Positions 3,669-45,920 of a stretch of 47,961 nucleotides of DNA are shown piece by piece. Position 1 is the stretch's first letter. Each line of letters opens with the position of its first letter. Source of the stretch: Octopus bimaculoides (taxonomy: Eukaryota); the NCBI RefSeq assembly GCF_001194135.2, contig NC_068991.1, forward strand, positions 15,456,770-15,504,730. Reading direction: 5' to 3'. The notes under the pieces were generated by a model that searched no databases, had not been told where the DNA came from, and worked only from the letters and a program-made list of their open reading frames with translations. The translations under genes were made by a program, and so were the position numbers.

Positions 3669-4040
3669 NNNNNNNNNNATCGTCCAACCCATGCTAGCAT
3701 GGAAAGCGGACATTAAACGATATATATAATTCATTCATATAAAAGGGTAAAGACCCCTTTCGGTTTGGTCATGAATGACCATGGGATTGCACCTAGAAAG
3801 TTCCCCTCCGAGACATAAGTCTGGGCAAGGTTGTTTATGGAAGACCAGCAGTTGCCCAAGCATACAAACCTCTCCTCTTCACACCACCGACGTTATCCAA
3901 GGGAAAGGCAAAGGGGCTGATACAGCTTGGCACCAGTGATGTTGCAACTCATTTCTACAGCTGAGTGAACTAGAGCAATGTGAAATGAAGTGTCTTGCTC
4001 AAGAACACAACACACAGCTCAGTTTGGGAGTTAAACTCAT
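3320..4040 (-). mobile_element. Two tandem SINE type F copies (~3320-3605 and ~3744-4040)
   Basis: Both read GGGTAAAGA..CCC.TTTCGGTCATGAATGAC...CAGCTGAGTGAACT.GAGCAA..TGAAAT on +; share the E core. Confidence 0.75.
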
Positions 4041-8197: not shown

Positions 8198-8633
<436 letters not shown>

Positions 8634-17292: not shown

Positions 17293-17736
17293 GTATCTGC
17301 TTCCCACCCCTATTTGGTGAAGCCACGCCGCCGTAGCCGTTGGATATTGTCTGACAACAGCCCAGTAGCCACTCGAATCTGTGTCTTAGACATTGTCTGT
17401 CTACTTCCGTCGACCAGCACCTGGATCCCTATTCCGAGAGGTGACACTCGCAAGATGCTTGCCGATAGCGGCCTCATCAAGAAGCTACAGATCACGTCAA
17501 CATCGACGGAAGACGAGCTGAAGCATATGATCTCGAACCTCTTCAGCGTGTCGTTCAACCTCGCTGAAGATGAGCTGCTTCCTTTCGACTACTTGCGAAC
17601 GCAACCGAGTTGTAAGCGTCTGGTGCGTCCGGAAGTTACAGAGGACTGGCACTGGGGTGGACGTGAAGTGGCTAACCTGGCAGGTCAAGGCTGTTTGTAT
17701 ATCGTCTCCAAGATCCCATTGTCTTTAGATTCAAAG
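17293..17736 (+). CDS. Internal coding exon A (148 aa, phase 0-0) of an uncharacterised protein; domain copy 1
   Basis: (CT)n pyrimidine tract then ttgcacAG at 17291-17292; open frame VSASHPYLVKPRRRSRW...GQGCLYIVSKIPLSLDSK; donor AAG|GTAAGA at 17737. Residues 17374-17721 align without gaps to exon B. Confidence 0.85.
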
Positions 17737-17824
17737 GTAAGACAAATCAGTTCCAATCTTGCTTGTTCGTGTTTTTAATTTGTTACTGTCGTTATTACTA
17801 TCATCCTCCTCATCATCATCGTTA

Positions 17825-17866
<42 letters not shown>

Positions 17867-18054
17867 TTACTAAGGAACAATAAGAAGAATGCGACTGTTA
17901 TTGTATGAAGAATATTTCTATACTTCATGTGTCTTCCACAAGTTCAAAATAATCATCTCAATCTACTTCATTTTGGTAATATTTAAGGATTAATTTTACT
18001 CCTCCCAAAGGTAAAGGAACAATAAGAAGAGCGCAACTGTTATTGAATGAACAA

Positions 18055-18086
<32 letters not shown>

Positions 18087-18088
<2 letters not shown>

Positions 18089-18313
18089 TGTAAAGAATAA
18101 CAAGTTTAGAAAGGTATAACAATGCATGCACTATAGAACAAAAAATGGACTATATACCTGTTGTAACAGACTCCAGCAAATAAGATCTGAAGAAGGAATT
18201 GTAATTCCAAAATATCATCGGACTATAAATAACCAAGTTACAACAGGTATATAGTCCATTTTTTGTTCTATAGTGCATTGTTATACCATTCTAAACTTTT
18301 TATTCTTTACAAA
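18087..18313. repeat. Inverted repeat, ~80-bp arms, 69-bp spacer
   Basis: 18087-18167 is near-perfectly complementary to 18237-18313. Confidence 0.9.
18184..18219 (+). ncRNA. Decayed hammerhead-like motif
   Basis: GAU CUGAAGA A GGAAU-UGUA-AUUCC AAAA UA UC AUC. The core GAAA reads AAAA, so probably inactive; stem I is only 3 bp. Confidence 0.3.
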
Positions 18314-18347
18314 CAATACACAATGCTTCAAGCGAACTACAATACTC

Positions 18348-18381
<34 letters not shown>

Positions 18382-20992
18382 CCAGCATTCCAACACACAG
18401 CCTAGTGGTTATGGTGTTGCACTCACGATCTAGAAATCAGGATTTCAATTCCTAGACTGGGTGGTGCGTTGTGTTCTTGTGCAAAACGCTTCATCTCACC
18501 TTTGCTCTACAATCACTTGGACACCTGACATGTGGTACACTGTGCACCTGTTCAGACAACGTCAATTTGATGGAGCGGCTGAGCTAATGTGCAGCATGAA
18601 CATTTGATCATTATAAACTTGTGCTGGTCATTCAGCAAAAAGCTGAACGCTCATACGCCATCTGCAACAGGAGAACCCATCATTAAAGCATTGGCCAAAA
18701 TACCTTTAAATTCTGAGTTTAGCTCCTGCCAAGGTCAACTTTGTCATCCCTCACTCTAACAATTCTGCCAGCTCAATAATAACAATTGTTATTTCTAATA
18801 TAGGCACAAGGCCTGTAATTTGAAAGAGAGGGCTGGTCACTTACATCAGCCCCAATACTTAGCTAGTACTTTAGCTAGTAAGGATGAAAGGTAAAATTGA
18901 CCGTATCAGAATTTGAACTCAGAATGTAATGAGCCAGAAGAAGTACACTAAGCATTTTGCCTGATGCACTAACGATTCTACTGGCAATTTTAGGGAGATC
19001 AGGTAAGTAGATGACATCAACCCCAGTACTCAGCTGGTACTTATTTTATCAATAGCCAAAACGATGTCAGGTAAGGTTGACCTTGGCAGCATTTGAACTC
19101 ACGATGTAAAGAACCAGAAGAAATGTCATTAAGTGTTTTTTCGAATATGCTTATAATTGTGCTGCTTTGATGATAATAATAACAATAATGATTTCTTTCT
19201 TTTCTTTTTTTTTTTTTTTTGCCACAGTGACATATTACGAAGGGGACATTACAAGGAGAGTTTACAATTTCTGTTGGGGTTTTGCATAAAAGATGGAGGC
19301 AAGAAAAGAGGGAAAATGAGATAAACATATGCATTGTTTGCAAAATATGTGAATACATTTATGATGCTACCCTCCTGATACAGAGGAACCTCTAGTTAGG
19401 GCCAATCAATGAACCCCACTGATCCAAGATGACCCTGACCACCAAGGGCACAAGTTTTCGCCCCCAAGTGTTGTTCTTCAATCTGCAAGAACATGTTTAG
19501 AGAAGGTCCATTCACCCTAACCACTTTTGTCACAGTCATCAACTTTTTGATAGACTTTCCAATGGGAGAACATTTCCCTCTCGACCCACACTTTCCATTC
19601 CAGTTGGATTTACAAAAAGTCAATGGGGACTTAACCAAAAATGATGTCTGTCCTCATCCATGTATGCAACCTCCTTTTTCCATGACCACTAGACAAAGGA
19701 ACACTGTCTGCCTTACCTTGTTAAAAGTAGGTGGTGGAACAATCTTCACTATGGTCTTGGACAAACAGCTCTTTTGATTTAACTCCACAAGTCAGCAATA
19801 CTTGAACACTGCATGAGTGCATGCAATGCAGTTTTGTCACTTTGCACACATCTCCAGTAGACCCACCTGGTTGTACTTCTGTCTTTGTATGGTTTATCTT
19901 AAATGAACAGTGCTCCTCAGTAGCATTGTCAAGCCAGGAATTTCTGGAAGTTATCCATGGTTGTCCCTGGTCTAAAAAGTGGAGGCATATGGCTCAGTGG
20001 TTAGGGTGTTGGACTCATGATCATAAGATTGTGGTTTTGATTCCTGGACCAGGCAACGCGTTGTGTTCTTGAGCGAAACACTTCATTTCACATTGCTTCA
20101 GTCCACTCAGCTGGCAAAAATGAGTAATCATGCGACGGACCAGCGTCCCATCCAGATAAGGGAATATGTACGGGGTTGATAAAATAAGTACCAGTTGAAC
20201 ACTGGGGTCGATGTAATCAACTCATCCCCTTCCTCCAAAATTGTTGCCCTTGTCTAAAAACTGACCAGCATCCTGTTCAGGTGGGGAATTTATATACCAT
20301 GGCCCTTATGAGTCAACATGACCCAAGAAAGTAATTTTACTTTTACCTGGTCTAAAAGTCATCTGAAACAGACCAGGTAGTTCATTCTCATCACCGCCTA
20401 CATTTCCCAAGAATATCATTACTCTTACCTACCTCTAGATCTCTGTATATTGCTAACATAGAATTCCACCAACTGCACAGCTCGACTGGTGGTAAGCAAT
20501 GTGCACCTGATGACATTACAGGTGCCAGGCACCTAGTGTTGGTCTTTTCTTGTCCCACGAATACTATTCAAAGAGATGAACTGCAGAAAGACATATCTTA
20601 CAAACAGAAATGACACCTGCTCATTGTCCAGAAAAATCTGCAGGTGTCACGGCCTCAGCTTGTGTCTGTGTAATAGCCATGGCATGTCAAGACAGCCTTC
20701 AAGAAGTTGCTGGCAACAGGTGGACCGTCTGACCAGTGGAATGCATTCTTCAGCAAAAAATGGAAAAGTAGATGGCTGCAGTCTGACCAAATGTGAACTG
20801 GGACAAGATACAGCAGTGAGGTGATAAGTTATTACAGGGGTGGACAGATCTATTAGGGATCACACACTAATATCAATAATAATAACGATGATGATTTTAA
20901 TAACAATTGTAATTATACCAATGAAATCAGAAATAATATTAGTGATAGTAATATTATTGTTATTCTGCATTCACTCAAATTAGTAGTTAGTT

Positions 20993-21376
20993 GTTGTTGG
21001 CACTCCGTCGCTTACGACGTCGAGGGTTCCAGTTGATCCGATCAACGGAACAGCCTGCTCGTGGAATTAACGTGCAAGTGGCTGAGCACTCCACAGACAC
21101 GTGTACCCTTAACGTAGTTCTCGGGGATATTCAGCGTGACACAGTGTGACAAGGCTGACCCTTTGAATTACAGGCACAACAGAAACAGGAAGTAAGAATG
21201 AAAGAAAGTTGTGGTGGAAGAGTACAGCAGGGGTCGCCACCATCCCCTGCCGGAGCATTGTGGAGGTTTAGGTGTTTCCGCTCAATAAACACTCACAACG
21301 CCCGGTCTGGGAATCGAAACCGCAATCCTATGACCACGAGTCCGTTGCCCTAACCACTGGGCCATTGTGCCTGCAC
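20993..21376 (-). mobile_element. SINE type D, full length, tRNA-derived head, (CAA)n tail
   Basis: Minus: TGGCCCAGTGG A box and GTTTCGATTCC B box; high identity to 24154-24537. Confidence 0.9.
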
Positions 21377-21494
21377 TTTCACTCAAATTACGATGTAGGA
21401 AAAATGAAAGGACCTGTATAGAGATCATTCCAGTCATTTGACTTGTCAGATTGAACTCCTGTCACCAGATATAACAGTTAAGATATAATATATA

Positions 21495-21800
21495 CGTGTA
21501 AAGACATTCGAGCGAGATCGTTGCCAGTGCCGCCGAACTGGCTCCTGTGCAGGTGGCACGTAAAATACACCATTTGAGCGTGGCCGTTGCCAGTACCGCC
21601 TGACTGGCCTTCATACCGGTGGCACATAAAAGCACCTACTACACTCTCGGAGTGGTTGACATTAGGAAGGGCATCCAGCTGTAGAAACTCTGCCAAATCA
21701 GATTGGAGGCTGGTGTAGCCATCTGGTTTCACCAGTCCTCAGTCAAATCGTCCAACCCATGCTAGCATGGAAAGCGGACTTTAAACGACGATGATGATGA
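21495..21800 (+). mobile_element. RTE 3' UTR fragment
   Basis: Shared tail core and (GAT)n. Confidence 0.85.
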
Positions 21801-22272
21801 TCCTCCCACGAAGGATGATGACAGCTACACATCATGGAAAATTGAACTAAAGAAGCTGTAGGTATGGTTGGTGTAAATATCTCGGCTTGCTTATTATAAT
21901 TCCTACCTCTTTGTCGTTTTTACCGCAAAGTGCTTGACCAGCAAATTGAATTCACAGAAAACCAATTTCTTTTTTTGCTGTTTTAAAATCACAGATCCAT
22001 TTAGCTAATCACCCACTTGAAATATTCATTATGATATCATCATCATCATCTTTATCATTGTCGTGATGATCATTTTAATGTCCGATTTTTCATGTTTGCA
22101 GGGGTTAGACAGAATTTATTGAGGCATATTTTTCTGCCTGGGTAACCCCTTCTTTCACCAGCATCCCCTGTTTCCTCATGGCCAGCCATGTTTTCATGAA
22201 AGGCTGGAAATGATTGATATTGCTTGTATGATGGTGATGCTCGTTTACAACCTACATGCAATGTTGTGATGA

Positions 22273-22312
<40 letters not shown>

Positions 22313-22316
<4 letters not shown>

Positions 22317-22706
22317 TCTTTTACTTGTTTCAGTCGTTTGACTGCGGCCATGCTGGAGCACCGCCTTTAGTCGAGCAAATCGACCCCAGGACTTATTCTT
22401 TGTAAGCCTAGTACTTATTCTATCGGTTCCTTTTGCTGAACCGCTAAGTTACGGGGACGTAAACACACCAGCATTGGTTGTCAAGCGATGTTGGGGGGAC
22501 AAACACAGACACACAAACACATACACACACATACATATATATACATATATACGACGGGCTTCTTTCAGTTTCCGTCTACCAAATCCACTCACAAGGCTTT
22601 GGTCAGCCCGAGGCTATAGTAGAAGACACTTGCCCAAGGTGCCACACAGTGGGACTGAACCCAGAACCATGTGGTTGGTAAGCAAGCTACTTACCACACA
22701 GCCACT
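22313..22706 (-). mobile_element. SINE type A, near full length
   Basis: Reverse complement of the 42354-42746 structure. Confidence 0.88.
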
Positions 22707-22895
22707 ATATAGACACCAGTGTGACTGTATTTTTGAGAAGCCTACTTCCCAACTATGTGTGTTTGGGTTCAATCCTACTGCACAGCACCTTGGACAAGTG
22801 TCTTCTGTTGTAGCCCTGGACTGAATAAAGCCTTGTGAAAGGATTTTGAAGACGGAAACTGAAAGAAGCTCAAATATGTGTGTGTGTGTTTGTAT

Positions 22896-22942
<47 letters not shown>

Positions 22943-24153
22943 TGCACCCTTGTCTAGACATCATATGTTGGTTGTAAATGAGTATATATGTCATGCATGC
23001 GAGGTTATTCTTTCCCAGTTTTCTGTAAAAAAGCATGTCTAGCAATGGGAAGATATTACTTTTCTTGGAAACAGATTAGGGTTGGTTACAAGAACGTGGA
23101 TCTGGTTGTAGCATATATACCTCAACAAATCCTATCTGGAAAAGTGGATGTCAAAAATAACAACGAGCTTCTTTCAATTTCCATCTATTAAATCCACTTG
23201 CAAGGCTTTGGTCAGCCTAGGGCTACAGTAAAAAGCACATGCCCGAGGTGCCATGCACTGGGAGTGAACCTAGAACCTCATGATTAGCATTTCACTTTTG
23301 AAATCTTTTAAAACTACACAGATACACTGCTATGTGTGTGTCTTATATGATTGCTTTTGTAAAATTTGATTATCTTATTTTAACTCCTGGATTTAGCCAT
23401 CGTTTCTTCTATACTGTATAAGAATGGCACTCCATAGGTTAGAACAATGAGGATTCTAGGTGATCCAAGCAACTGAATAGTCTGCTTGTGAAATTAACGT
23501 GTACGTGGCTGAGTATTCCACAGACATGTGTACACTTATTGTAGTTCTCAGAGAGATTCAGTGTGACACGAGTATGACAAGGCTGGTTCTTTGAAATACA
23601 GGTACTACTCATTTCTGCCAGCTGAGTGAACTGGAGCAACATGTCACCAGGAATTGAACTCATGAACTTGTGATTGTGAGCCAAATAACTTAACCACTCA
23701 GCCATGTGCCTTCACTCATATAAGAATACAGGCATCACATTCTAAATACTCATTTATGGCACAGTTCTGTTTGTTCTAATACAATTTTTGGTCTATCACA
23801 GTAAATTTTATTATCACCCAGATTTCAGTCCGTTGCCACATGTCACTCATTCTTTGGCCTCTGTTCCTCAGAGCCATCTAGTCTGGTGCCACCTTCACAG
23901 GTGCACTCTCAACTAAACTCATTATCCCTCTTATTTTTACCCTTATGTCCAAACTCCCATACCCGGCACTTACCACTATTCTACATCTGCCTCCTCATAA
24001 TATTGGTCCTCTAGAATCCCCCCACCCCCTGCACGATGTTCATTGTATCAATTCCACCAGTCTTGGAGGACTTGTGAAAACCATGAGCAATTGCTCCTTC
24101 TGTCCGGATCTAATTGCTGAAATAAAGACAATCTGCATTCCACAAATTGTTTT

Positions 24154-24537
24154 TGTTGGCACTCCATCGCTTACGACGTCGAGGGTTCCAGTTGATCCGA
24201 TCAACGGAACAGCCTGCTCGTGAAATTAACGTGCAAGTGGCTGAACACTCCACTAGACACGTGTACCCTTAACGTAGTTTTCAGGGATATTCAGCGTGAC
24301 ACAATGTGACACGGCTGACCCTTTGAATTACAGGCACAAAAGAAACAGGAGGTAAGAGTGAGAGAAAGTTGTGGTAGAAGAGTACAGCAGGGTTCGCCAC
24401 CATTCCCTGCCGGAGCCTCCTGGAGCTTTTAGGTGTTTTCGCTCAATAAACACTCACAACGCCCGGTCTGGGAATCGAAACTGCAATCCTATGACCGCGA
24501 GTCCGCTGCCCTAACCACTGGGCCATTGCGCCTCCAC
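24154..24537 (-). mobile_element. SINE type D, full length
   Basis: Same structure as 20993-21376. Confidence 0.9.
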
Positions 24538-24779
24538 GCATTCCACAAACACACAGAGTGCAATGGGAAGACTTTTTTGAGAGGAGAAATATCTCGGTCT
24601 TCACAGCATTTATTTTCATCTTTATCCTACAACACTTGGCAGTGAAGCCATTTAATACAAGCTGGAGATTATCTTCTGATCAACCAAATAGTACCATGTC
24701 ATCTACAAATGTGAGCCAACCAATCCCCACTTAATGAAGGATCTTTGGAATATCATTACTCAAGAAGGTGTGTAGCTTG

Positions 24780-24952
24780 GAGTCTTTCCGAGTTCAAGCT
24801 GCTACTTCTCCATATCAAGAGGTTACAGCTCTGATACTATGGATATGTGGTCAGAATGCTGCAGGAAAGAATTATACAACAGATTCTTCAACTAAGCCAA
24901 CTAGCAGGAGACCTAGTGGTAGACCATAAATGGAATGGTTGGATAATAATAA
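24780..24952 (+). mobile_element. Old RTE-like LINE 3' fragment (second family)
   Basis: LLLHIKRLQL*YYGYVVRMLQERIIQQIL/KPTSRRPSGRP*MEWLDN (frameshifted). Confidence 0.6.
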
Positions 24953-25669
24953 TAATAATACCCATCGTCTCGGTTGTGCATGGGAATCCAGCAGGAAAGT
25001 TTATTGACAGTTTCTTCTGACAGGACCCTATGGAGGGAGAAAATGCATGACAGGACCCTATGGAGCAAAAGCATAAGGATTCTACCCCCCCCCCCNNNNN
25101 NNNNNAGCAAAAGCATAAGGATTCTACCCCCCCCCCCGCCTCACCCTGTGACTTTTCAAGAAATAGTGAGTAACGAAAATGGATGGATGGAAAACAACTT
25201 GTTAAATAAATATATTTCTGTCACAATTATTCCTACTGTTACATACCCTTCTGCTGTCACACAAATTTGACCATGTCACATTTCACTCAGTCACATTAAT
25301 CCCTGCTGTTACTCATTCTATTCCAATGGAATATTCCATATGCTGTCACTCAAATTTTACTGTCACACTTCACTCTATTGTCTTGTCACATTACTCTCAG
25401 TTAACACACTAATCTGTTTCTGTCACAATATGTTCTGCTGTTACATGTCCTACTATTCTGGATACTATTAAACAAAAGAGTTCCTATTGTCAAACCTTAT
25501 CCAAAAATTGTTTCTGCAATCAAAAAAATGTTATGTTTGATTCAATTATTTCTCTTTAAACTGATACTACATTTTGTTACAATATTCTGTTACAAATTCT
25601 GTTATAGTTACCCCTTCTGTCTCATAAAGCTGATCTGATTCTGTTACATATTTTTTCTCACTCTTGGCA

Positions 25670-25945
25670 CAAACTTGGTTGTGTGGTTAAGAGGTTTGCT
25701 TCACAACCACATGGTTTCAGGTTCAATATCACTGCTAAACACTTTGAACAAGTGTCTTTTACTAAAACCACGAGCCAATCAATATAAACAACGAGCTGTT
25801 CTGTTCCCACCTACCAAATACTCTCACAAGGATTTGGTCAGATCAGGGGCAAAACACACTTGCCGAAGGTGACATGCAGTGAGATTGAACCTGAAGCCAT
25901 GTGGTTAGAAATCAATCTTCTTAACTACACAGCTATGCCATGCCT
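25670..25945. mobile_element. Two SINE-A heads in inverted orientation (25670-25790 +, 25800-25945 -)
   Basis: Both match the type A head. Confidence 0.65.
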
Positions 25946-26272
25946 ACACCTATATACATATATTAATATGTAGCAGAAGCAACGGAGTGACTCAAGGGCT
26001 GAGAATTTTGTGTGTTGGCACTTATCAAAAGCTCTCGGCCCTTTGATAAATGTACAAAACTGAAATTTAGTACCACTCAACCAAAACTCTTGAAAGTGAT
26101 GCCATAGCATGGTTGAAACCAATAAAGGAATAATATAATTGAAGAAAAGACTATAATGTTTTGCTCAAAAATGATATTGGGGTTACACATTGGTGTTAGC
26201 TCACTGTGCTGGCCTCTGTGATAAATAGTAAAGATATATCTCAAATCTTATTCTTCATTTGTTTCTTTCCAG

Positions 26273-26869
26273 GCTCCACTGAAATCAATAGTGCAGGAGG
26301 TGCAGAGACAAGCTGCTGCAGCTGCTGCCGTCGCTGCAACATCTATTGTAAGCACGTTGACCACGACAACCAGCATGACGACAGGAATCTCACTGTCTGT
26401 AGATGGCCAGACGGCTTCTCTGTCCCAAGTCCACTCTGCTGCCCCACTCTCGGCTACCGCCCAGACACATGCTCTTGCACCGCTCTCAGACAGCAGAACA
26501 CGCATGCGGATATGTACAAAGGAGATCGTTTGCCTCCTGCCAACCTGCATCACTTCTATACCAATCCCAAGAAGGTACACCCGGCGCATTCTAGCTGAGA
26601 AGGGTCTCGTTCAAAAGATACGTATCGCCACCTATTGGACAGAAGAACAAATTAAAACCGAAATCTCATCTCTGTTTCGTAAGCCCTACGGACTTCAACA
26701 GGGCGAAATCCTTCCGTTTGACTATCTATGTACAAAGCCAAACTGTAAACGACTGGTCAGAGCTTCAGCATCCGATTCCGTCCAGTGGGGTGGTCAAGAG
26801 GTCGCTAGGTTGGCTGGCCAGGGGTGTCTATACATAGTTTCCAGGATTCCATTATACACAAATACAATG
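26273..26869 (+). CDS. Internal coding exon B (199 aa, phase 0-0): Ala/Thr/Ser-rich linker plus domain copy 2
   Basis: Acceptor ttcatttgtttctttccAG at 26271-26272; open frame APLKSIVQEVQRQAAAAAA...GQGCLYIVSRIPLYTNTM; donor ATG|GTGAGT at 26870. Residues 26507-26854 are 66/116 identical to exon A by hand count. Confidence 0.85.
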
Positions 26870-27804: not shown

Positions 27805-28153
27805 CTTTAGACATCATGAAGGTAGAAGGGAGTTATATGTAGAAGGGAGTTATATATTTTATCGAAATCCTTCCAGTATAGCTTAGTTAAGCTATACACA
27901 AAAAAAAAAATCAACAGAGAACAAGAGTGTGTCGATATAGAATTTATTTTGTTACGTTTGGTTATACACCATGAGGGTGAAAGCAATTGGCTGACTGGTG
28001 CCACAGAGAAGTCCTGCTAACCAAAAGTCCCTTCACTGCCGACCAGCTCACTAGCTAGCCTGCAGTGAAGTTCCTGTCTACAGTTTGTCTGTTATAAGTC
28101 CTTGAGCAGTGCACGACACAAGAACAATTCATATATTTTCACACATACACATA

Positions 28154-28988
28154 AAGCCAGTATGCTCCGTTGGATGTGTAATGTCAATGTGAATACCCGT
28201 CAGAGTGTAAGTATCTTGAGAGAAAAGCTGAACATTAGAAGCATCAGTTGTGGTGTGCAAGAGAGACGATTGCGCTGGTATGGACATGTGGTGAGAATGG
28301 ATGAGGATAGCTGCGTGAAAAAGTGCCACACCCTAACAGTTGAGGGAACCCGTGGAAGAGGTAGGCCAAGGAAGACCTGGGCTGAGGTGGTGAGGCAAGA
28401 CCTTCGTACATTGGGCCTCACCGAGGCGATGACTACTGACCGAGACCTTTGGAAATGTGCTGTGCGNNNNNNNNNNNNNNNNNNNNNNNNNNNNNNNNNN
28501 NNNNNNNNNNNNNNNNNNNNNNNNNNNNNNNNNNNNNNNNNNNNNNNNNNNNNNNNNNNNNNNNNNNNNNNNNNNNNNNNNNNNNNNNNNNNNNNNNNNN
28601 NNNNNNNNNNNNNNNNNNNNNNNNNNNNNNNNNNNNNNNNNNNNNNNNNNNNNNNNNNNNNNNNNNNNNNNNNNNNNNNNNNNNNNNNNNNNNNNNNNNN
28701 NNNNNNNNNNNNNNNNNNNNNNNNNNNNNNNNNNNNNNNNNNNGCGGGTGGCACATAAAAGACACCATTTCGAGCGTGGCCGTTTTCGTGCGGGTGACAC
28801 GTAAAAGCACCCACTACACTCTCTGAGTGGTTGGCGTTAGGAAGGGCATCCAGCTGTAGAAACTCTGCCAAATTAGATTGGAGCCTGGTCTTGCTATCCG
28901 GTTTCACCAGTCCTCAGTCAAATCGTCCAACCCATGCTAGCATGGAAAGCGGACGTTAAACGATGATGATGATGATGATGATGATGAT
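28154..28988 (+). mobile_element. 5'-truncated RTE-clade LINE (RT C-terminus, 3' UTR, (GAT)n tail), gap inside
   Basis: SMLRWMCNV...LRWYGHVVRMDEDSCVKKCHTLTVEGTRGRGRPRKTWAEVVRQDL; ends GCATGGAAAGCGGACGTTAAAC(GAT)n. Confidence 0.9.
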
Positions 28989-39519: not shown

Positions 39520-39927
39520 GGACACGAGACTCGGCTTGTGAAGACCTGTTGGGGCAAGCGAAGTGAAATCATGATGGCACCTGTGCCCAGCGTCGCCTTT
39601 CTGGCACTTGTACCAGTGGCATGTGTTAAGACATTCAAGTGAGATCATTGCCAGTGCTGCAGGACTGTGCAGGTTGCATGTAAAATGCACCATTTTGACC
39701 TTGGCCGTTGCCAGTACCTCCTGACTGGCCTTTGTGCCTGTGGCACGTAAAAGCACCTACTACACTCTCGGAGTGGTTGGCGTTAGGAAGGGCATCCAGC
39801 TATAGAAACTCTGCCAAATCAGATTGGAGCCTGGTGTCGCCTCCTGGTCCACCAGTCCTCAGTCAAATCGTCCAACCCATGCTAGCATGGAAAGCGGACG
39901 TTAAACGGTGATGATGATGATGATGAT
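39520..39927 (+). mobile_element. RTE 3' UTR fragment
   Basis: Shared tail core and (GAT)n. Confidence 0.85.
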
Positions 39928-45022: not shown

Positions 45023-45920
45023 CTATATACATACATTTATGTATATACACATATATGAATGTGTTTGTATATTTGTATTTATTTTACACCTTTATTGTAT
45101 TTTATTTATTTTTATGTTTTTTTTTCATTTAAATTTTATTTCTGTTATTTATGTTTTTATGTGCTTTCATTTTCTTTTTCCACCTGTTTTTTTTTCTTTT
45201 TCTTTTTCTCAGCCTCATATTGTGTCCATGTCCAAATCATCTTCACCCTCAACAGCTCGTTATTCGCTAATTGCAAATAACTATTACGGTAATAATTATC
45301 ACGAAGATAGCGATGATGATGATGGTGGTGGTGGTGGTGGTATCGGTGTCAGTGGTGGTGGTGGTCATGGTAATAGTGGTGTCGGTGTTTGCAATGATGA
45401 TGATGTTGATGATGATGACAAGGATTACTTGCATATGAAAATATATCCTGTGTTTTAAAAGCACCTCCCCCCACCCCGAAAGAATTACAGGAAAAAAAGT
45501 AATTTAAAAGCAAAAAAAAAGAAGAAGAAAAAACATAAAATAGAATGAAGCATGAGGACGAGAAGACTGTCAATGATGATGATTCTGGTGATGATGATGA
45601 TGATGATGATGATGACTATGATGGTTACTGTTGCAATGGTGAAGACTATTTACTTATGAGGTTGTACCCTGGATTGTTAGACCCAGAAATAGATTTGGTG
45701 GGTGAGATTCAATAATGTGATGGTGGTGGTGGTTGGGTGGTGGTGGTGGTGGTGGTGGTGGTGATGGTGATGATGATGGTGGTGGTGGTGGTGGTGGTGG
45801 TGGTGGTGTGAAATGTAATTGTTTATGCAGAGAATGATGACGATGATGACGATGACGACAATGACTGATGATAATCTAAAAGTATTCTTCAAAGAAATGT
45901 AAGCATGAAAATACCACAAA

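What the first reader, a model, noticed from the sequence alone, without database searches (positions are those of the whole stretch)
17293..26869. Gene built from tandem, symmetric exons each encoding one copy of an unnamed ~116-aa domain
Seen: two phase 0-0 exons 8.5 kb apart encode a gapless repeat (RIC..IVCLLP...IPIPR..TR..LA..GL..K..I....TE...K..IS.LF.....L...E.LPFDYL.T.P.CKRLVR........WGG.EVA.LAGQGCLYIVS.IPL; 66/116 identical by hand). Both frames are open among decayed repeats, which implies purifying selection. Exon A has a basic KPRRRSR stretch (possible NLS); exon B has a poly-Ala/Thr linker. Inference: an exon-duplicated module. From memory it resembles the unannotated CL...P...L..AGLG.K.I...GQ..IYIRP module seen upstream of G2E3-like HECT domains in fish and invertebrates, possibly a ubiquitin-like/beta-grasp fold. 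No gene name can be supported. The symmetric phases allow cassette or mutually exclusive splicing.
Basis: partly seen in the sequence, partly recalled or inferred. Interest (0 to 1): 0.7.

Follow-up and report, generated by a model that had tools for sequence, protein, structure and literature searches.

The report
Unnamed ubiquitin-like domain, duplicated in octopus
Two exons of an uncharacterised Octopus bimaculoides gene each encode one copy of a strongly conserved ~116-residue animal protein domain that has no Pfam model, is predicted to fold like ubiquitin and Ras-binding domains, and sits in front of a HECT ubiquitin-ligase domain in fish, a sea lily and a priapulid worm.

Summary
Exon A (17293-17736) and exon B (26273-26869) have canonical AG/GT sites and are both phase 0-0. 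Their 116-residue cores align without gaps (66/116 identical). The assembly gap lies inside the intron and touches neither frame.

They belong to LOC106869718 ('uncharacterized protein'). Transcript contigs from a related species join A directly to B, and no contig skips either exon.

Both cores are under strong purifying selection. They show 0/232 amino-acid changes against O. sinensis, and dN/dS is below 0.02 against the distant relative, whereas the linker has 37/83 changes.

The domain has no Pfam model and no PDB sequence match. It does have 330 HMMER relatives in a coral, a priapulid, a crinoid, teleosts and frogs.

A 59-sequence alignment gives an AlphaFold2 model with pLDDT 94.8. Every top Foldseek match is a ubiquitin-like beta-grasp domain (RA/RBD, UBL, RAWUL), but all are weak (E >= 0.017). 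A basic, NLS-like patch precedes the domain across the family.

Best reading: two constitutive exons of a nuclear adaptor carrying two ubiquitin-like-fold binding modules. The biochemical function is inferred, not shown.

The parts
17293..17736 (+). Exon A (444 nt, phase 0-0): 27-aa lead with a basic patch, domain copy A, and a 5-aa tail
   Evidence: AG|GT sites seen. Identical to residues 6-153 of XP_014771050.1. The orthologous segment is joined to the exon B segment in transcripts.
17320..17340 (+). KPRRRSR basic patch (NLS-like) just upstream of copy A
   Evidence: Read directly from the sequence. It is 100% conserved in O. sinensis and in the distant relative. The 26 residues at this position in relatives average 6.3 K/R and 1.0 D/E, against a background of about 11% each.
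17374..17721 (+). Domain copy A core (116 aa, RICVLD...SKIPL), predicted ubiquitin-like beta-grasp fold with an insert
   Evidence: Family HMM E 4e-37. AF2 pLDDT 94.8, pTM 0.87. Foldseek top hits are RA/RBD/UBL domains. dN 0.040 with dS about 2.4 against the relative.
17737..26272 (+). Phase-0 intron of about 8.5 kb, full of short interspersed repeats; it contains the assembly gap 25096-25105, which has duplicated 32-nt flanks
26273..26869 (+). Exon B (597 nt, phase 0-0): 78-aa Ala/Thr/Ser-rich linker, domain copy B, and a 5-aa tail
   Evidence: AG|GT sites seen. Identical to residues 154-352 of XP_014771050.1. The linker evolves fast: 37/83 aa differ from the relative and dN is 0.33.
26507..26854 (+). 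Domain copy B core (116 aa, RICTKE...SRIPL)
   Evidence: Family HMM E 1e-37. 66/116 identical to copy A. 2/116 aa differ from the distant relative and dN is 0.019 with saturated dS.
45213..45458 (+). Annotated last coding exon (81 aa plus stop): an Asp/Gly-rich, low-complexity tail of doubtful status
   Evidence: It follows ...ctcag| and matches residues 353-433 of XP_014771050.1. It accounts for 12 of the 15 differences from O. sinensis X1. The relative's transcripts and O. sinensis X2 end instead with ISWTGCNNNQQT, which was not found in the window.

Best explanation
SHOWN:
- Exons A and B are constitutive, phase-0 coding exons of Octopus bimaculoides LOC106869718.
- Each encodes one copy of a ~116-120-residue globular domain. 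The family is widespread in animals (soft coral, priapulid, crinoid, cephalopods, teleosts, frogs) and has no Pfam model.
- The two copies arose by an old tandem duplication, and each is kept almost unchanged by purifying selection.
- The predicted fold is a ubiquitin-like beta-grasp (beta-beta-alpha-beta-beta-alpha-beta). It carries an extra strand and helix in the first hairpin, and this insert holds the best-conserved motif, IPxPRGxxRxxLxxxGL.
- In a related species the full protein is about 690 aa. It consists of a short N-terminal helix motif shared by the family, about 300 aa of Gln/His/Ser-rich disordered sequence, a basic patch, copy A, an Ala/Thr-rich linker, copy B and a 12-aa tail.

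INFERRED:
- The basic patch acts as a nuclear localisation signal.
- The domains are non-catalytic binding modules. In other lineages the same module sits N-terminal to a G2E3-like HECT catalytic domain, where it would recruit a substrate or partner or regulate the ligase.
- The octopus protein has two such modules and no catalytic domain. It would therefore act as a nuclear scaffold, or as a competitor for the same partner.
- The ligand is unknown.
For: Gene and splicing:
- The RefSeq models of O. bimaculoides and O. sinensis contain A and B.
- Uninterrupted 689-aa ORFs on 2.7-3.2-kb Logan contigs from three sequencing runs join ...GATTCCAAG|GCCCCTCTG..., matching the end of exon A and the start of exon B.
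- About 70 contigs in that cluster carry both exons in all spliced forms.

Selection.

Family:
- 330 HMMER hits at E <= 1e-3 and 104 at E <= 1e-10.
- No Pfam family for the octopus proteins, for 59 diverse domain segments, or for the full-length transcript protein.
- No PDB sequence match.

Fold:
- AF2 pLDDT is 94.8 and all five models score 94.0-94.8.
- Foldseek against PDB gives NORE1A RA (3ddc_B, prob 0.96), Rgl2/RalGDS RA, plexin RBDs, PI3K ABD, TBCE Ubl and RING1B RAWUL.
- TM-scores normalised to the target are 0.43-0.57 for the named single-domain matches.

Context:
- HECT lies downstream of the domain in teleosts and a crinoid. In the priapulid, P0003 aligns to a fish protein over both the domain and the start of the HECT region.
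- A UIM-like motif lies between the domain and HECT in three teleost lineages.
- Myb/SANT-like DNA-binding domains are partners in frogs and in one unnamed contig.
- The basic patch is family-wide and is weak or absent in front of internal copies of tandem arrays. This fits a signal that is needed once per protein.
- The N-terminal helix motif is shared by 12 distinct members.
Against: - No experiment or ligand supports any function.
- The Foldseek matches are all below the usual significance level (best E 0.017, TM normalised to the query about 0.46). The fold class is therefore likely rather than proven, and it rests on a predicted model.
- The NLS role is inferred from composition alone.
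- The window itself holds neither the N-terminal exon(s) nor the conserved 12-aa tail exon, and neither was found within 10 kb of the annotated gene. The full O. bimaculoides protein is therefore extrapolated from a relative whose species I could not identify.
- No O. bimaculoides RNA-seq was examined.
- InterPro, PANTHER, CDD and AlphaFold DB could not be consulted. A name or model may exist there.
Confidence: 0.6

Rival explanations
1. The domain is a true, very divergent Ras-association/Ras-binding domain, and the protein is a small-GTPase effector. Conserved arginines on the first hairpin would contact the GTPase switch region, as they do in RA and RBD domains.
For: The best Foldseek matches are RA/RBD domains solved in complex with Ras, Rap or Rnd: 3ddc_B, 4m8n, 8au4, 1rax and 3q3j, with prob up to 0.96. 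The near-invariant R25 and R29 lie in the insert of the first hairpin.
Against: No Pfam RA, RBD or ubiquitin hit in any of 59 members, even at E <= 10. E-values are 0.017 or worse. Other UBL classes (TBCE Ubl, RAWUL, SUMO, UBX) score almost as well. The partner domains seen (HECT, Myb/SANT, UIM-like) and the NLS-like patch point to nuclear ubiquitin or chromatin biology rather than membrane GTPase signalling.
Confidence: 0.12
2. The two symmetric exons are used as cassette or mutually exclusive exons, so the gene makes single-domain isoforms with different specificities.
For: All introns are phase 0, so skipping A or B keeps the frame. The two copies differ at 50 of 116 positions, and each is conserved separately.
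Against: Both O. sinensis isoforms and the O. bimaculoides model contain both exons. In the relative, all spliced transcript forms contain A joined to B: 689-aa forms on 24 contigs, 414-aa forms on 34 and a 466-aa form on 12. Variation is confined to the 5' start, the 3' end and one retained-intron fragment.
Confidence: 0.07
3. The domain binds nucleic acid rather than protein. The conserved arginines and the flanking basic patch would form a DNA- or RNA-binding surface.
For: There is a family-wide basic patch, and R25 and R29 are conserved. The domain occurs with Myb/SANT-like DNA-binding domains and once with an integrase zinc-binding domain.
Against: The UBL-fold matches are protein-binding modules. 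The basic patch lies in a disordered segment outside the fold and is missing before the internal copies of tandem arrays. The most frequent partner domain is HECT.
Confidence: 0.1
4. The exons are fragments of a transposable-element ORF, or of a TE-captured module, and not a host gene.
For: The family is multi-copy in some fish: 17 members in one 90%-identity cluster in loach. One relative (P0140) combines the domain with zf-C17orf113 and Integrase_H2C2 in one ORF. Myb_DNA-bind_4 partners are often TE-derived (my own knowledge).
Against: Only two copies are in the window, and both have canonical splice sites. No repeat overlaps them. They are spliced into one mRNA. dN/dS is below 0.02 across a saturated divergence. 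One of the 49 longer relatives carries TE-type domains (Integrase_H2C2 with zf-C17orf113, in P0140); two more carry Myb_DNA-bind_4. The viral structure library gives only weak ubiquitin-like hits.
Confidence: 0.03

Closest known systems
N-terminal module of teleost 'G2/M phase-specific E3 ubiquitin-protein ligase-like' (G2E3-like) HECT proteins, e.g. Misgurnus XP_055049467.1 and Betta XP_040928000.1
   Same: It is the same sequence family (HMMER E 1e-26, about 40% identity). These proteins share the basic patch in front of the domain and the N-terminal helix motif.
   Different: The fish proteins continue into a UIM-like motif and a HECT catalytic domain. The octopus protein has a second copy of the module instead, and no Pfam domain at all. 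The module itself is unnamed in those proteins too.
Ras-association / Ras-binding domains (NORE1A RA 3ddc_B, RalGDS RA 1rax, Rgl2 RBD 8au4, plexin RBDs)
   Same: These are the best structural matches. They share the ubiquitin-like beta-grasp core, and TM normalised to the target is 0.43-0.57 for the single-domain entries.
   Different: There is no sequence-profile relationship and E >= 0.017. The octopus domain is about 25-30 residues larger, with a conserved strand-helix insert (IPxPRGxxRxxL) in the first hairpin. GTPase binding is untested.
Non-conjugated ubiquitin-like domains (TBCE Ubl 1wjn, RING1B RAWUL 3ixs, USP7 UBLs, UBX, SUMO)
   Same: They have the same fold class and score nearly as well as RA domains. 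They are likewise embedded as binding or regulatory modules in ubiquitin-system proteins.
   Different: There is no match to Pfam ubiquitin-type families. The domain has no C-terminal Gly-Gly: both octopus copies end ...IPLS/IPLY, so it is not a conjugatable modifier.
Human G2E3 and fish NHRE3 (PMC13623101)
   Same: Both belong to HECT ligases of the G2E3 type, whose non-catalytic N-terminal region sets specificity. The paper states that the N-terminal regions of G2E3-like fish proteins differ from those of other animals.
   Different: NHRE3 is described there with an NHR domain at residues 12-358. Human G2E3 has PHD/RING-type zinc fingers (my own knowledge). Neither was shown to contain this module, and the octopus protein has no HECT domain.

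Membership tests
Unnamed 'PRGxxR' domain family (this report's alignment A3) | Significant match of the whole ~116-residue core to the family profile | tested here: met
   E 4e-37 (copy A) and 1e-37 (copy B) against the A3 HMM. The reciprocal search gives 330 relatives.
Unnamed 'PRGxxR' domain family (this report's alignment A3) | Near-invariant residues C12, L13, P24, R25, R29, L32, G36, L37, F60, F74, L77, L86, W97, Y112 | tested here: met
   All are present in both octopus copies.
Unnamed 'PRGxxR' domain family (this report's alignment A3) | Basic (NLS-like) patch within about 20 residues upstream of the first or only domain copy | tested here: met
   KPRRRSR lies before copy A. Copy B has only a weak patch, like the internal repeats of the 12-copy relative.
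Unnamed 'PRGxxR' domain family (this report's alignment A3) | N-terminal helix motif (A-phi-x-x-A-V-x-x-A-phi-basic-x-S/A-L) at the protein start | tested here: inconclusive
   It is present in the relative's 689-aa transcript protein (LLQAIEKAVSAGVKEAL) and in 11 other distinct members. The exon is not in the window or within 10 kb of the annotated gene.
Ubiquitin-like (beta-grasp) superfold | beta-beta-alpha-beta-beta-(alpha)-beta topology and structural superposition on known UBL domains | tested here: met
   The elements of the pLDDT 94.8 model are in the right order, with an insert. Essentially all of the top 50 PDB matches are UBL-type domains and TM normalised to the target reaches 0.57, but E >= 0.017, and this is a predicted rather than solved structure.
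Ubiquitin family proper (conjugatable modifiers, Pfam PF00240) | Profile match and a C-terminal Gly-Gly for conjugation | tested here: not met
   No Pfam hit in 59 members at E <= 10. The domains end ...KIPLSLDSK and ...RIPLYTNTM and are internal to the protein.
Ras-association domain (Pfam RA, PF00788) / Raf-like RBD | Sequence-profile match to the family | tested here: not met
   No hit in any of 59 members at E <= 10, and no PDB sequence hit.
Ras-association domain (Pfam RA, PF00788) / Raf-like RBD | GTP-dependent binding of a Ras-family GTPase | not testable with these tools
   This needs binding assays. Only weak structural similarity is available.
G2E3-like HECT E3 ligases | C-terminal HECT catalytic domain with the active-site cysteine | tested here: not met
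   There is no HECT or other Pfam domain in XP_014771050.1, in the O. sinensis isoforms' shared part, or in the relative's full-length 689-aa protein. HECT is present in the fish and crinoid relatives.
Transposable-element ORF | Transposase, RT or integrase domains, a multicopy DNA repeat, and no host-type splicing or constraint | tested here: not met
   No TE domain was found, the exons do not overlap any window repeat, the exons are spliced, and dN/dS is below 0.02. A single relative has an integrase zinc-binding domain.

The most novel reading that the evidence does not exclude
The module is an ancient, so far undescribed ubiquitin-like/RA-like domain. It is present from cnidarians to vertebrates and serves as the partner-recognition or autoregulatory unit of a whole clade of G2E3-like HECT ligases. 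Cephalopods would have kept it as a HECT-less nuclear protein with two copies, acting as a scaffold or decoy for the same, still unknown, ligand.
Probability: 0.25. Interest if true: 0.6.

Novelty: new variant of a known kind. Interest (0 to 1): 0.45.

Why it matters
- It defines a conserved animal protein domain that the current Pfam copy does not cover and that no paper in the searched library describes.
- It supplies a high-confidence fold prediction, conserved motifs and a set of domain architectures: alone, 2 copies, 12 copies, with HECT, with Myb/SANT, and fused to PAICS in frogs.
- This gives a handle on a large, unnamed and in places expanded group of fish 'G2E3-like' ligases, and on hundreds of 'uncharacterized protein' entries in invertebrates.
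- It also shows that the RefSeq model of the octopus gene probably lacks its real N-terminal exon(s) and carries a doubtful last exon.
- The importance is moderate. The fold is a familiar one and no function has been demonstrated.

Tried and rejected
- The word-index homology search with one copy found nothing, and with the family alignment it found only 6 proteins. The exhaustive HMMER search was needed.
- AF2 with only the two octopus copies gave pLDDT 45 and was discarded.
- PDB sequence searches gave only chance-level hits: GST E 0.16 and MecI E 0.024.
- The BFVD viral structure search gave only weak ubiquitin-like hits.
- Rfam found nothing in the window.
- A 13-aa 'GQGCL..' match at 3820-3858 suggested a third copy, but it was noise.
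- Exon 1 (MDEQN) was searched for in the window and is absent. It lies 4.97 kb upstream of the window start.
- O. sinensis DNA could not be fetched because the gene range is 140 kb, so no dN/dS was computed for that pair.
- The N-terminal exon and the ISWTGCNNNQQT exon were not found within 10 kb on either side of the annotated gene. Only low-complexity matches appeared, and several assembly gaps lie there.
- Literature searches for G2E3-like or ubiquitin-like N-terminal modules, and for the locus name, found nothing relevant except the NHRE3 paper, which describes a different N-terminal domain.
- Other window ORFs have no Pfam domains.

Full report
**1. Observation**

The window is Octopus bimaculoides DNA. 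It lies on chromosome record CM046611.1 of assembly GCA_001194135.2; window position = L004 position minus 6971.

- Exon A (17293-17736, 444 nt) is bounded by ...cttgcacag| and |gtaagac.
- Exon B (26273-26869, 597 nt) is bounded by ...ctttccag| and |gtgagtg.
- Both lengths are multiples of three and both frames start at the first exon base, so both exons are phase 0-0.

BLASTP of the two translations gives 53% identity over 133 residues, E 7e-49. The cores RIC...IPL (17374-17721 and 26507-26854) align without a gap, with 66/116 identical residues. A family HMM run on all six frames finds only these two copies (E 4e-37 and 1e-37); everything else has E > 1.

The flagged assembly gap (25096-25105) lies in the intron, far from both exons. 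It is flanked by the same 32 nt on each side, a sign of overlapping contig ends. It affects only the stated intron length.

**2. The gene**

The exhaustive HMMER search returned the RefSeq product of this locus, XP_014771050.1 (LOC106869718, 'uncharacterized protein', 433 aa). It consists of MDEQN + exon A + exon B + an 81-aa tail encoded at 45213-45458. The annotated start lies 4.97 kb upstream of the window. It sits in a 39-nt segment that follows an AG acceptor and is open in frame back to that acceptor.

O. sinensis has an orthologue (LOC115217591) with two isoforms. Both contain A and B and differ only at the 3' end.

The last word-index search found P0196, a 689-aa protein that is 85% identical over the A-B part. 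It is encoded as an uninterrupted ORF on 2.7-3.2-kb Logan contigs from three sequencing runs. In the genome the same coding sequence is split by an 8.5-kb intron, so these contigs must be spliced transcripts. At the junction they read GATTCCAAG|GCCCCTCTG, against GATTCAAAG|GCTCCACTG in the window.

The cluster holds nine protein forms on about 70 contigs:
- long forms (689 aa);
- forms with an alternative start (414 aa);
- one form reading through the donor of exon B (tail VSE..., matching gtgagtgaa in the window);
- one fragment retaining the intron before exon B.

Every spliced form has A joined to B, so the exons are constitutive. No cassette or mutually exclusive use is seen.

The relative's protein also shows what the RefSeq model probably lacks: about 327 N-terminal residues, comprising a helix motif followed by Gln/His/Ser-rich sequence. 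It ends in ISWTGCNNNQQT, the same tail as O. sinensis isoform X2. Neither of these parts was found in the window or within 10 kb of the annotated gene. Several assembly gaps lie in that region.

**3. Selection**

| Comparison | Region | Result |
|---|---|---|
| Copy A vs copy B | cores | identity at codon positions 1/2/3 = 69/78/24%; pS 0.92 (saturated), pN 0.28 |
| O. bimaculoides vs O. sinensis | two cores | 0/232 aa differences |
| O. bimaculoides vs O. sinensis | rest of protein | 15/205 aa differences (Fisher p 9e-6) |
| Window vs relative's transcript | core A | dN 0.040, dS about 2.4 |
| Window vs relative's transcript | core B | dN 0.019, dS saturated |
| Window vs relative's transcript | linker | 37/83 residues changed, dN 0.33 |

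The duplication is therefore old and the similarity between copies is maintained at protein level. The two copies are each other's closest relatives (54% identity, against at most 45% to any other taxon). The duplication thus happened in the lineage leading to cephalopods and predates the split from the relative.

The window is full of short interspersed repeats (194 pairwise matches). None overlaps the exons.

**4. The domain family**

Pfam has no model for it:
- nothing for the two exons at E <= 10;
- nothing for the whole proteins;
- no consistent hit in 59 diverse domain segments at E <= 10.

PDB sequence searches are negative.

HMMER finds 330 relatives at E <= 1e-3. The named ones come from:
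- Priapulus caudatus and the soft coral Xenia;
- the crinoid Antedon;
- many teleosts (Misgurnus, Paramisgurnus, Betta, Megalops, salmonids, Paramormyrops);
- frogs (Xenopus, Engystomops, Pristimantis, Pyxicephalus, Ranitomeya).

Architectures observed:
- Domain followed by a G2E3-like HECT domain, in teleosts and the crinoid. In the priapulid, P0003 aligns to fish P0004 over both the domain (E 2e-30) and the start of the HECT region (E 2e-7), and the next called gene has a weak HECT hit.
- RING + B-box + domain + HECT, in one tarpon gene model.
- Myb/SANT-like domain + this domain + PAICS, in frogs.
- This domain + a Myb/SANT-like domain.
- One ORF with zf-C17orf113 + domain + Integrase_H2C2.
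- Twelve tandem copies in a 2,095-aa intronless ORF on a metagenome contig.
- Many short stand-alone forms.

Three further family features emerged:
- A basic patch lies just upstream of the domain. It averages 6.3 K/R and 1.0 D/E in 26 residues, against about 11% each in the background. It is weak before the internal copies of arrays. The octopus KPRRRSR is this patch.
- An N-terminal helix motif occurs in 12 distinct members, including the cephalopod transcript, the coral and the fish.
- In three teleost lineages a UIM-like motif (for example EEDEALEEAIQRSLLEE) lies between the domain and HECT. This was read by pattern and not confirmed by a profile.

The 'one exon per domain' layout is not general. 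The priapulid gene has an intron inside the domain, and the 12-copy gene has none.

**5. Fold**

With only the two octopus copies, AF2 failed (pLDDT 45). With 59 diverse homologues it gave pLDDT 94.8 and pTM 0.87, and all five models scored 94.0-94.8.

The order of elements is: strand 5-13, short strand 20-22, helix 26-34, strand 38-44, helix 49-59, strands 74-80 and 85-87, helix 99-106, strand 110-115. I read this as the ubiquitin beta-beta-alpha-beta-beta-alpha-beta core with a strand-helix insert in the first hairpin. The insert carries the near-invariant P24, R25, R29, L32, G36 and L37.

Foldseek against PDB found no match at E <= 1e-3. Its top 50 are essentially all ubiquitin-like-fold domains: NORE1A RA (E 0.017, prob 0.96), Rgl2 and RalGDS RA, plexin RBDs, PI3K ABD, SNX17 FERM-F1, TBCE Ubl, RING1B RAWUL, USP7 UBLs, SUMO, UBX and ISG15. 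TM normalised to the target reaches 0.57. The viral library gave only weak ubiquitin-like hits.

The fold class is well supported. Membership of any named sequence family is not.

**6. Mechanism**

Shown: two constitutive exons, an old duplication, strong constraint on each copy, a globular UBL-type predicted fold, and the listed architectures.

Inferred:
- The protein is nuclear. This rests on the conserved basic patch, on the Gln/His-rich disordered region typical of nuclear regulators (my own knowledge), and on Myb/SANT and G2E3-type partners elsewhere.
- The domain is a non-catalytic binding module.
- Where it precedes HECT, it most likely recruits a substrate or partner, or regulates the ligase.
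- With two modules and no catalytic domain, the octopus protein would act as a scaffold or competitor.

Rivals are scored in their own section: a true RA-type GTPase binder, a nucleic-acid binder, alternative single-domain isoforms, and a TE fragment.

**7. Novelty and verdict**

The gene is annotated but unnamed. In the resources I could query, the domain is uncatalogued (Pfam-A copy with newest models from 2025, PDB, and the paper library). The fold is familiar.

I rate it a new variant of a known kind: a new sequence family of the ubiquitin-like fold with a characteristic insert and flanking motifs. Interest is moderate.

I could not check InterPro, PANTHER, CDD or AlphaFold DB.

Noticed in passing
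window 25064-25095 and 25106-25137: The 10-N assembly gap is flanked on both sides by the same 32 nt (AGCAAAAGCATAAGGATTCTACCCCCCCCCCC). The two contig ends probably overlap, so the gap may be spurious.
   Followed up: partly
window 45213-45458: The annotated last exon encodes an Asp/Gly-rich, microsatellite-like tail that is poorly conserved even in O. sinensis. The relative's transcripts and O. sinensis isoform X2 end with a different, fully conserved 12-aa tail (ISWTGCNNNQQT), which was not found in the window.
   Followed up: partly
L004 1977-2015 (4.97 kb upstream of the window start): The RefSeq start codon (MDEQN) lies in a 39-nt segment that follows an AG acceptor and is open in frame back to it (DLHSEWSVMDEQN). 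In the alignment it lines up with the internal ...IEMDQPGRNPELQ of the relative's 689-aa protein. The model probably lacks about 330 N-terminal residues.
   Followed up: partly
L001 5001-11288: An intronless 6,288-nt ORF on an 837-kb contig of ENA metagenome assembly ERZ21736675 encodes 12 tandem copies of the domain with a period of about 165-175 aa. Three central repeats are nearly identical, which indicates recent repeat expansion. The organism is unknown.
   Followed up: partly
proteins P0018, P0042, P0076, P0091, P0123 (frogs): In five frog genera, gene models place a Myb/SANT-like domain and this domain upstream of, and fused with, the purine-synthesis enzyme PAICS (paics.2.L in Xenopus laevis). 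It is unclear whether this is a real fusion isoform or a recurrent merging of neighbouring genes.
   Followed up: no
protein P0140 (Logan contig, 2,675 nt): A single 680-aa ORF combines zf-C17orf113, this domain and an integrase zinc-binding domain (Integrase_H2C2). It is the only link to a transposon-type domain among the 49 longer relatives.
   Followed up: no
proteins P0004 (304-320), P0006 (312-328), P0019 (354-370): A motif fitting the ubiquitin-interacting-motif pattern (acidic run, L/I, xxA, xxxS, acidic) lies between the domain and the HECT domain in three teleost lineages.
   Followed up: partly
L002 1897-2494: A second, diverged copy of the domain (42-56% identical to P0003) lies about 1 kb upstream of the Priapulus gene. 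It is split into two pieces at the same place as the annotated copy.
   Followed up: no
window, e.g. 2230-2522 vs 21068-21357 and 24227-24518; 8343-8538 vs 21623-21801, 28803-28988, 39749-39927: The window is dense with short interspersed repeats of 100-300 nt at 70-94% identity (194 pairwise matches), with mono- to trinucleotide microsatellites and with ten N gaps.
   Followed up: partly
window 28102-28466: An ORF running into an assembly gap reads ...RLRWYGHVVRMDE...GRGRPRKTW...DRDLW. From memory this resembles the C-terminal tail of retrotransposon ORFs that are common in invertebrates. Pfam gave no significant hit.
   Followed up: partly
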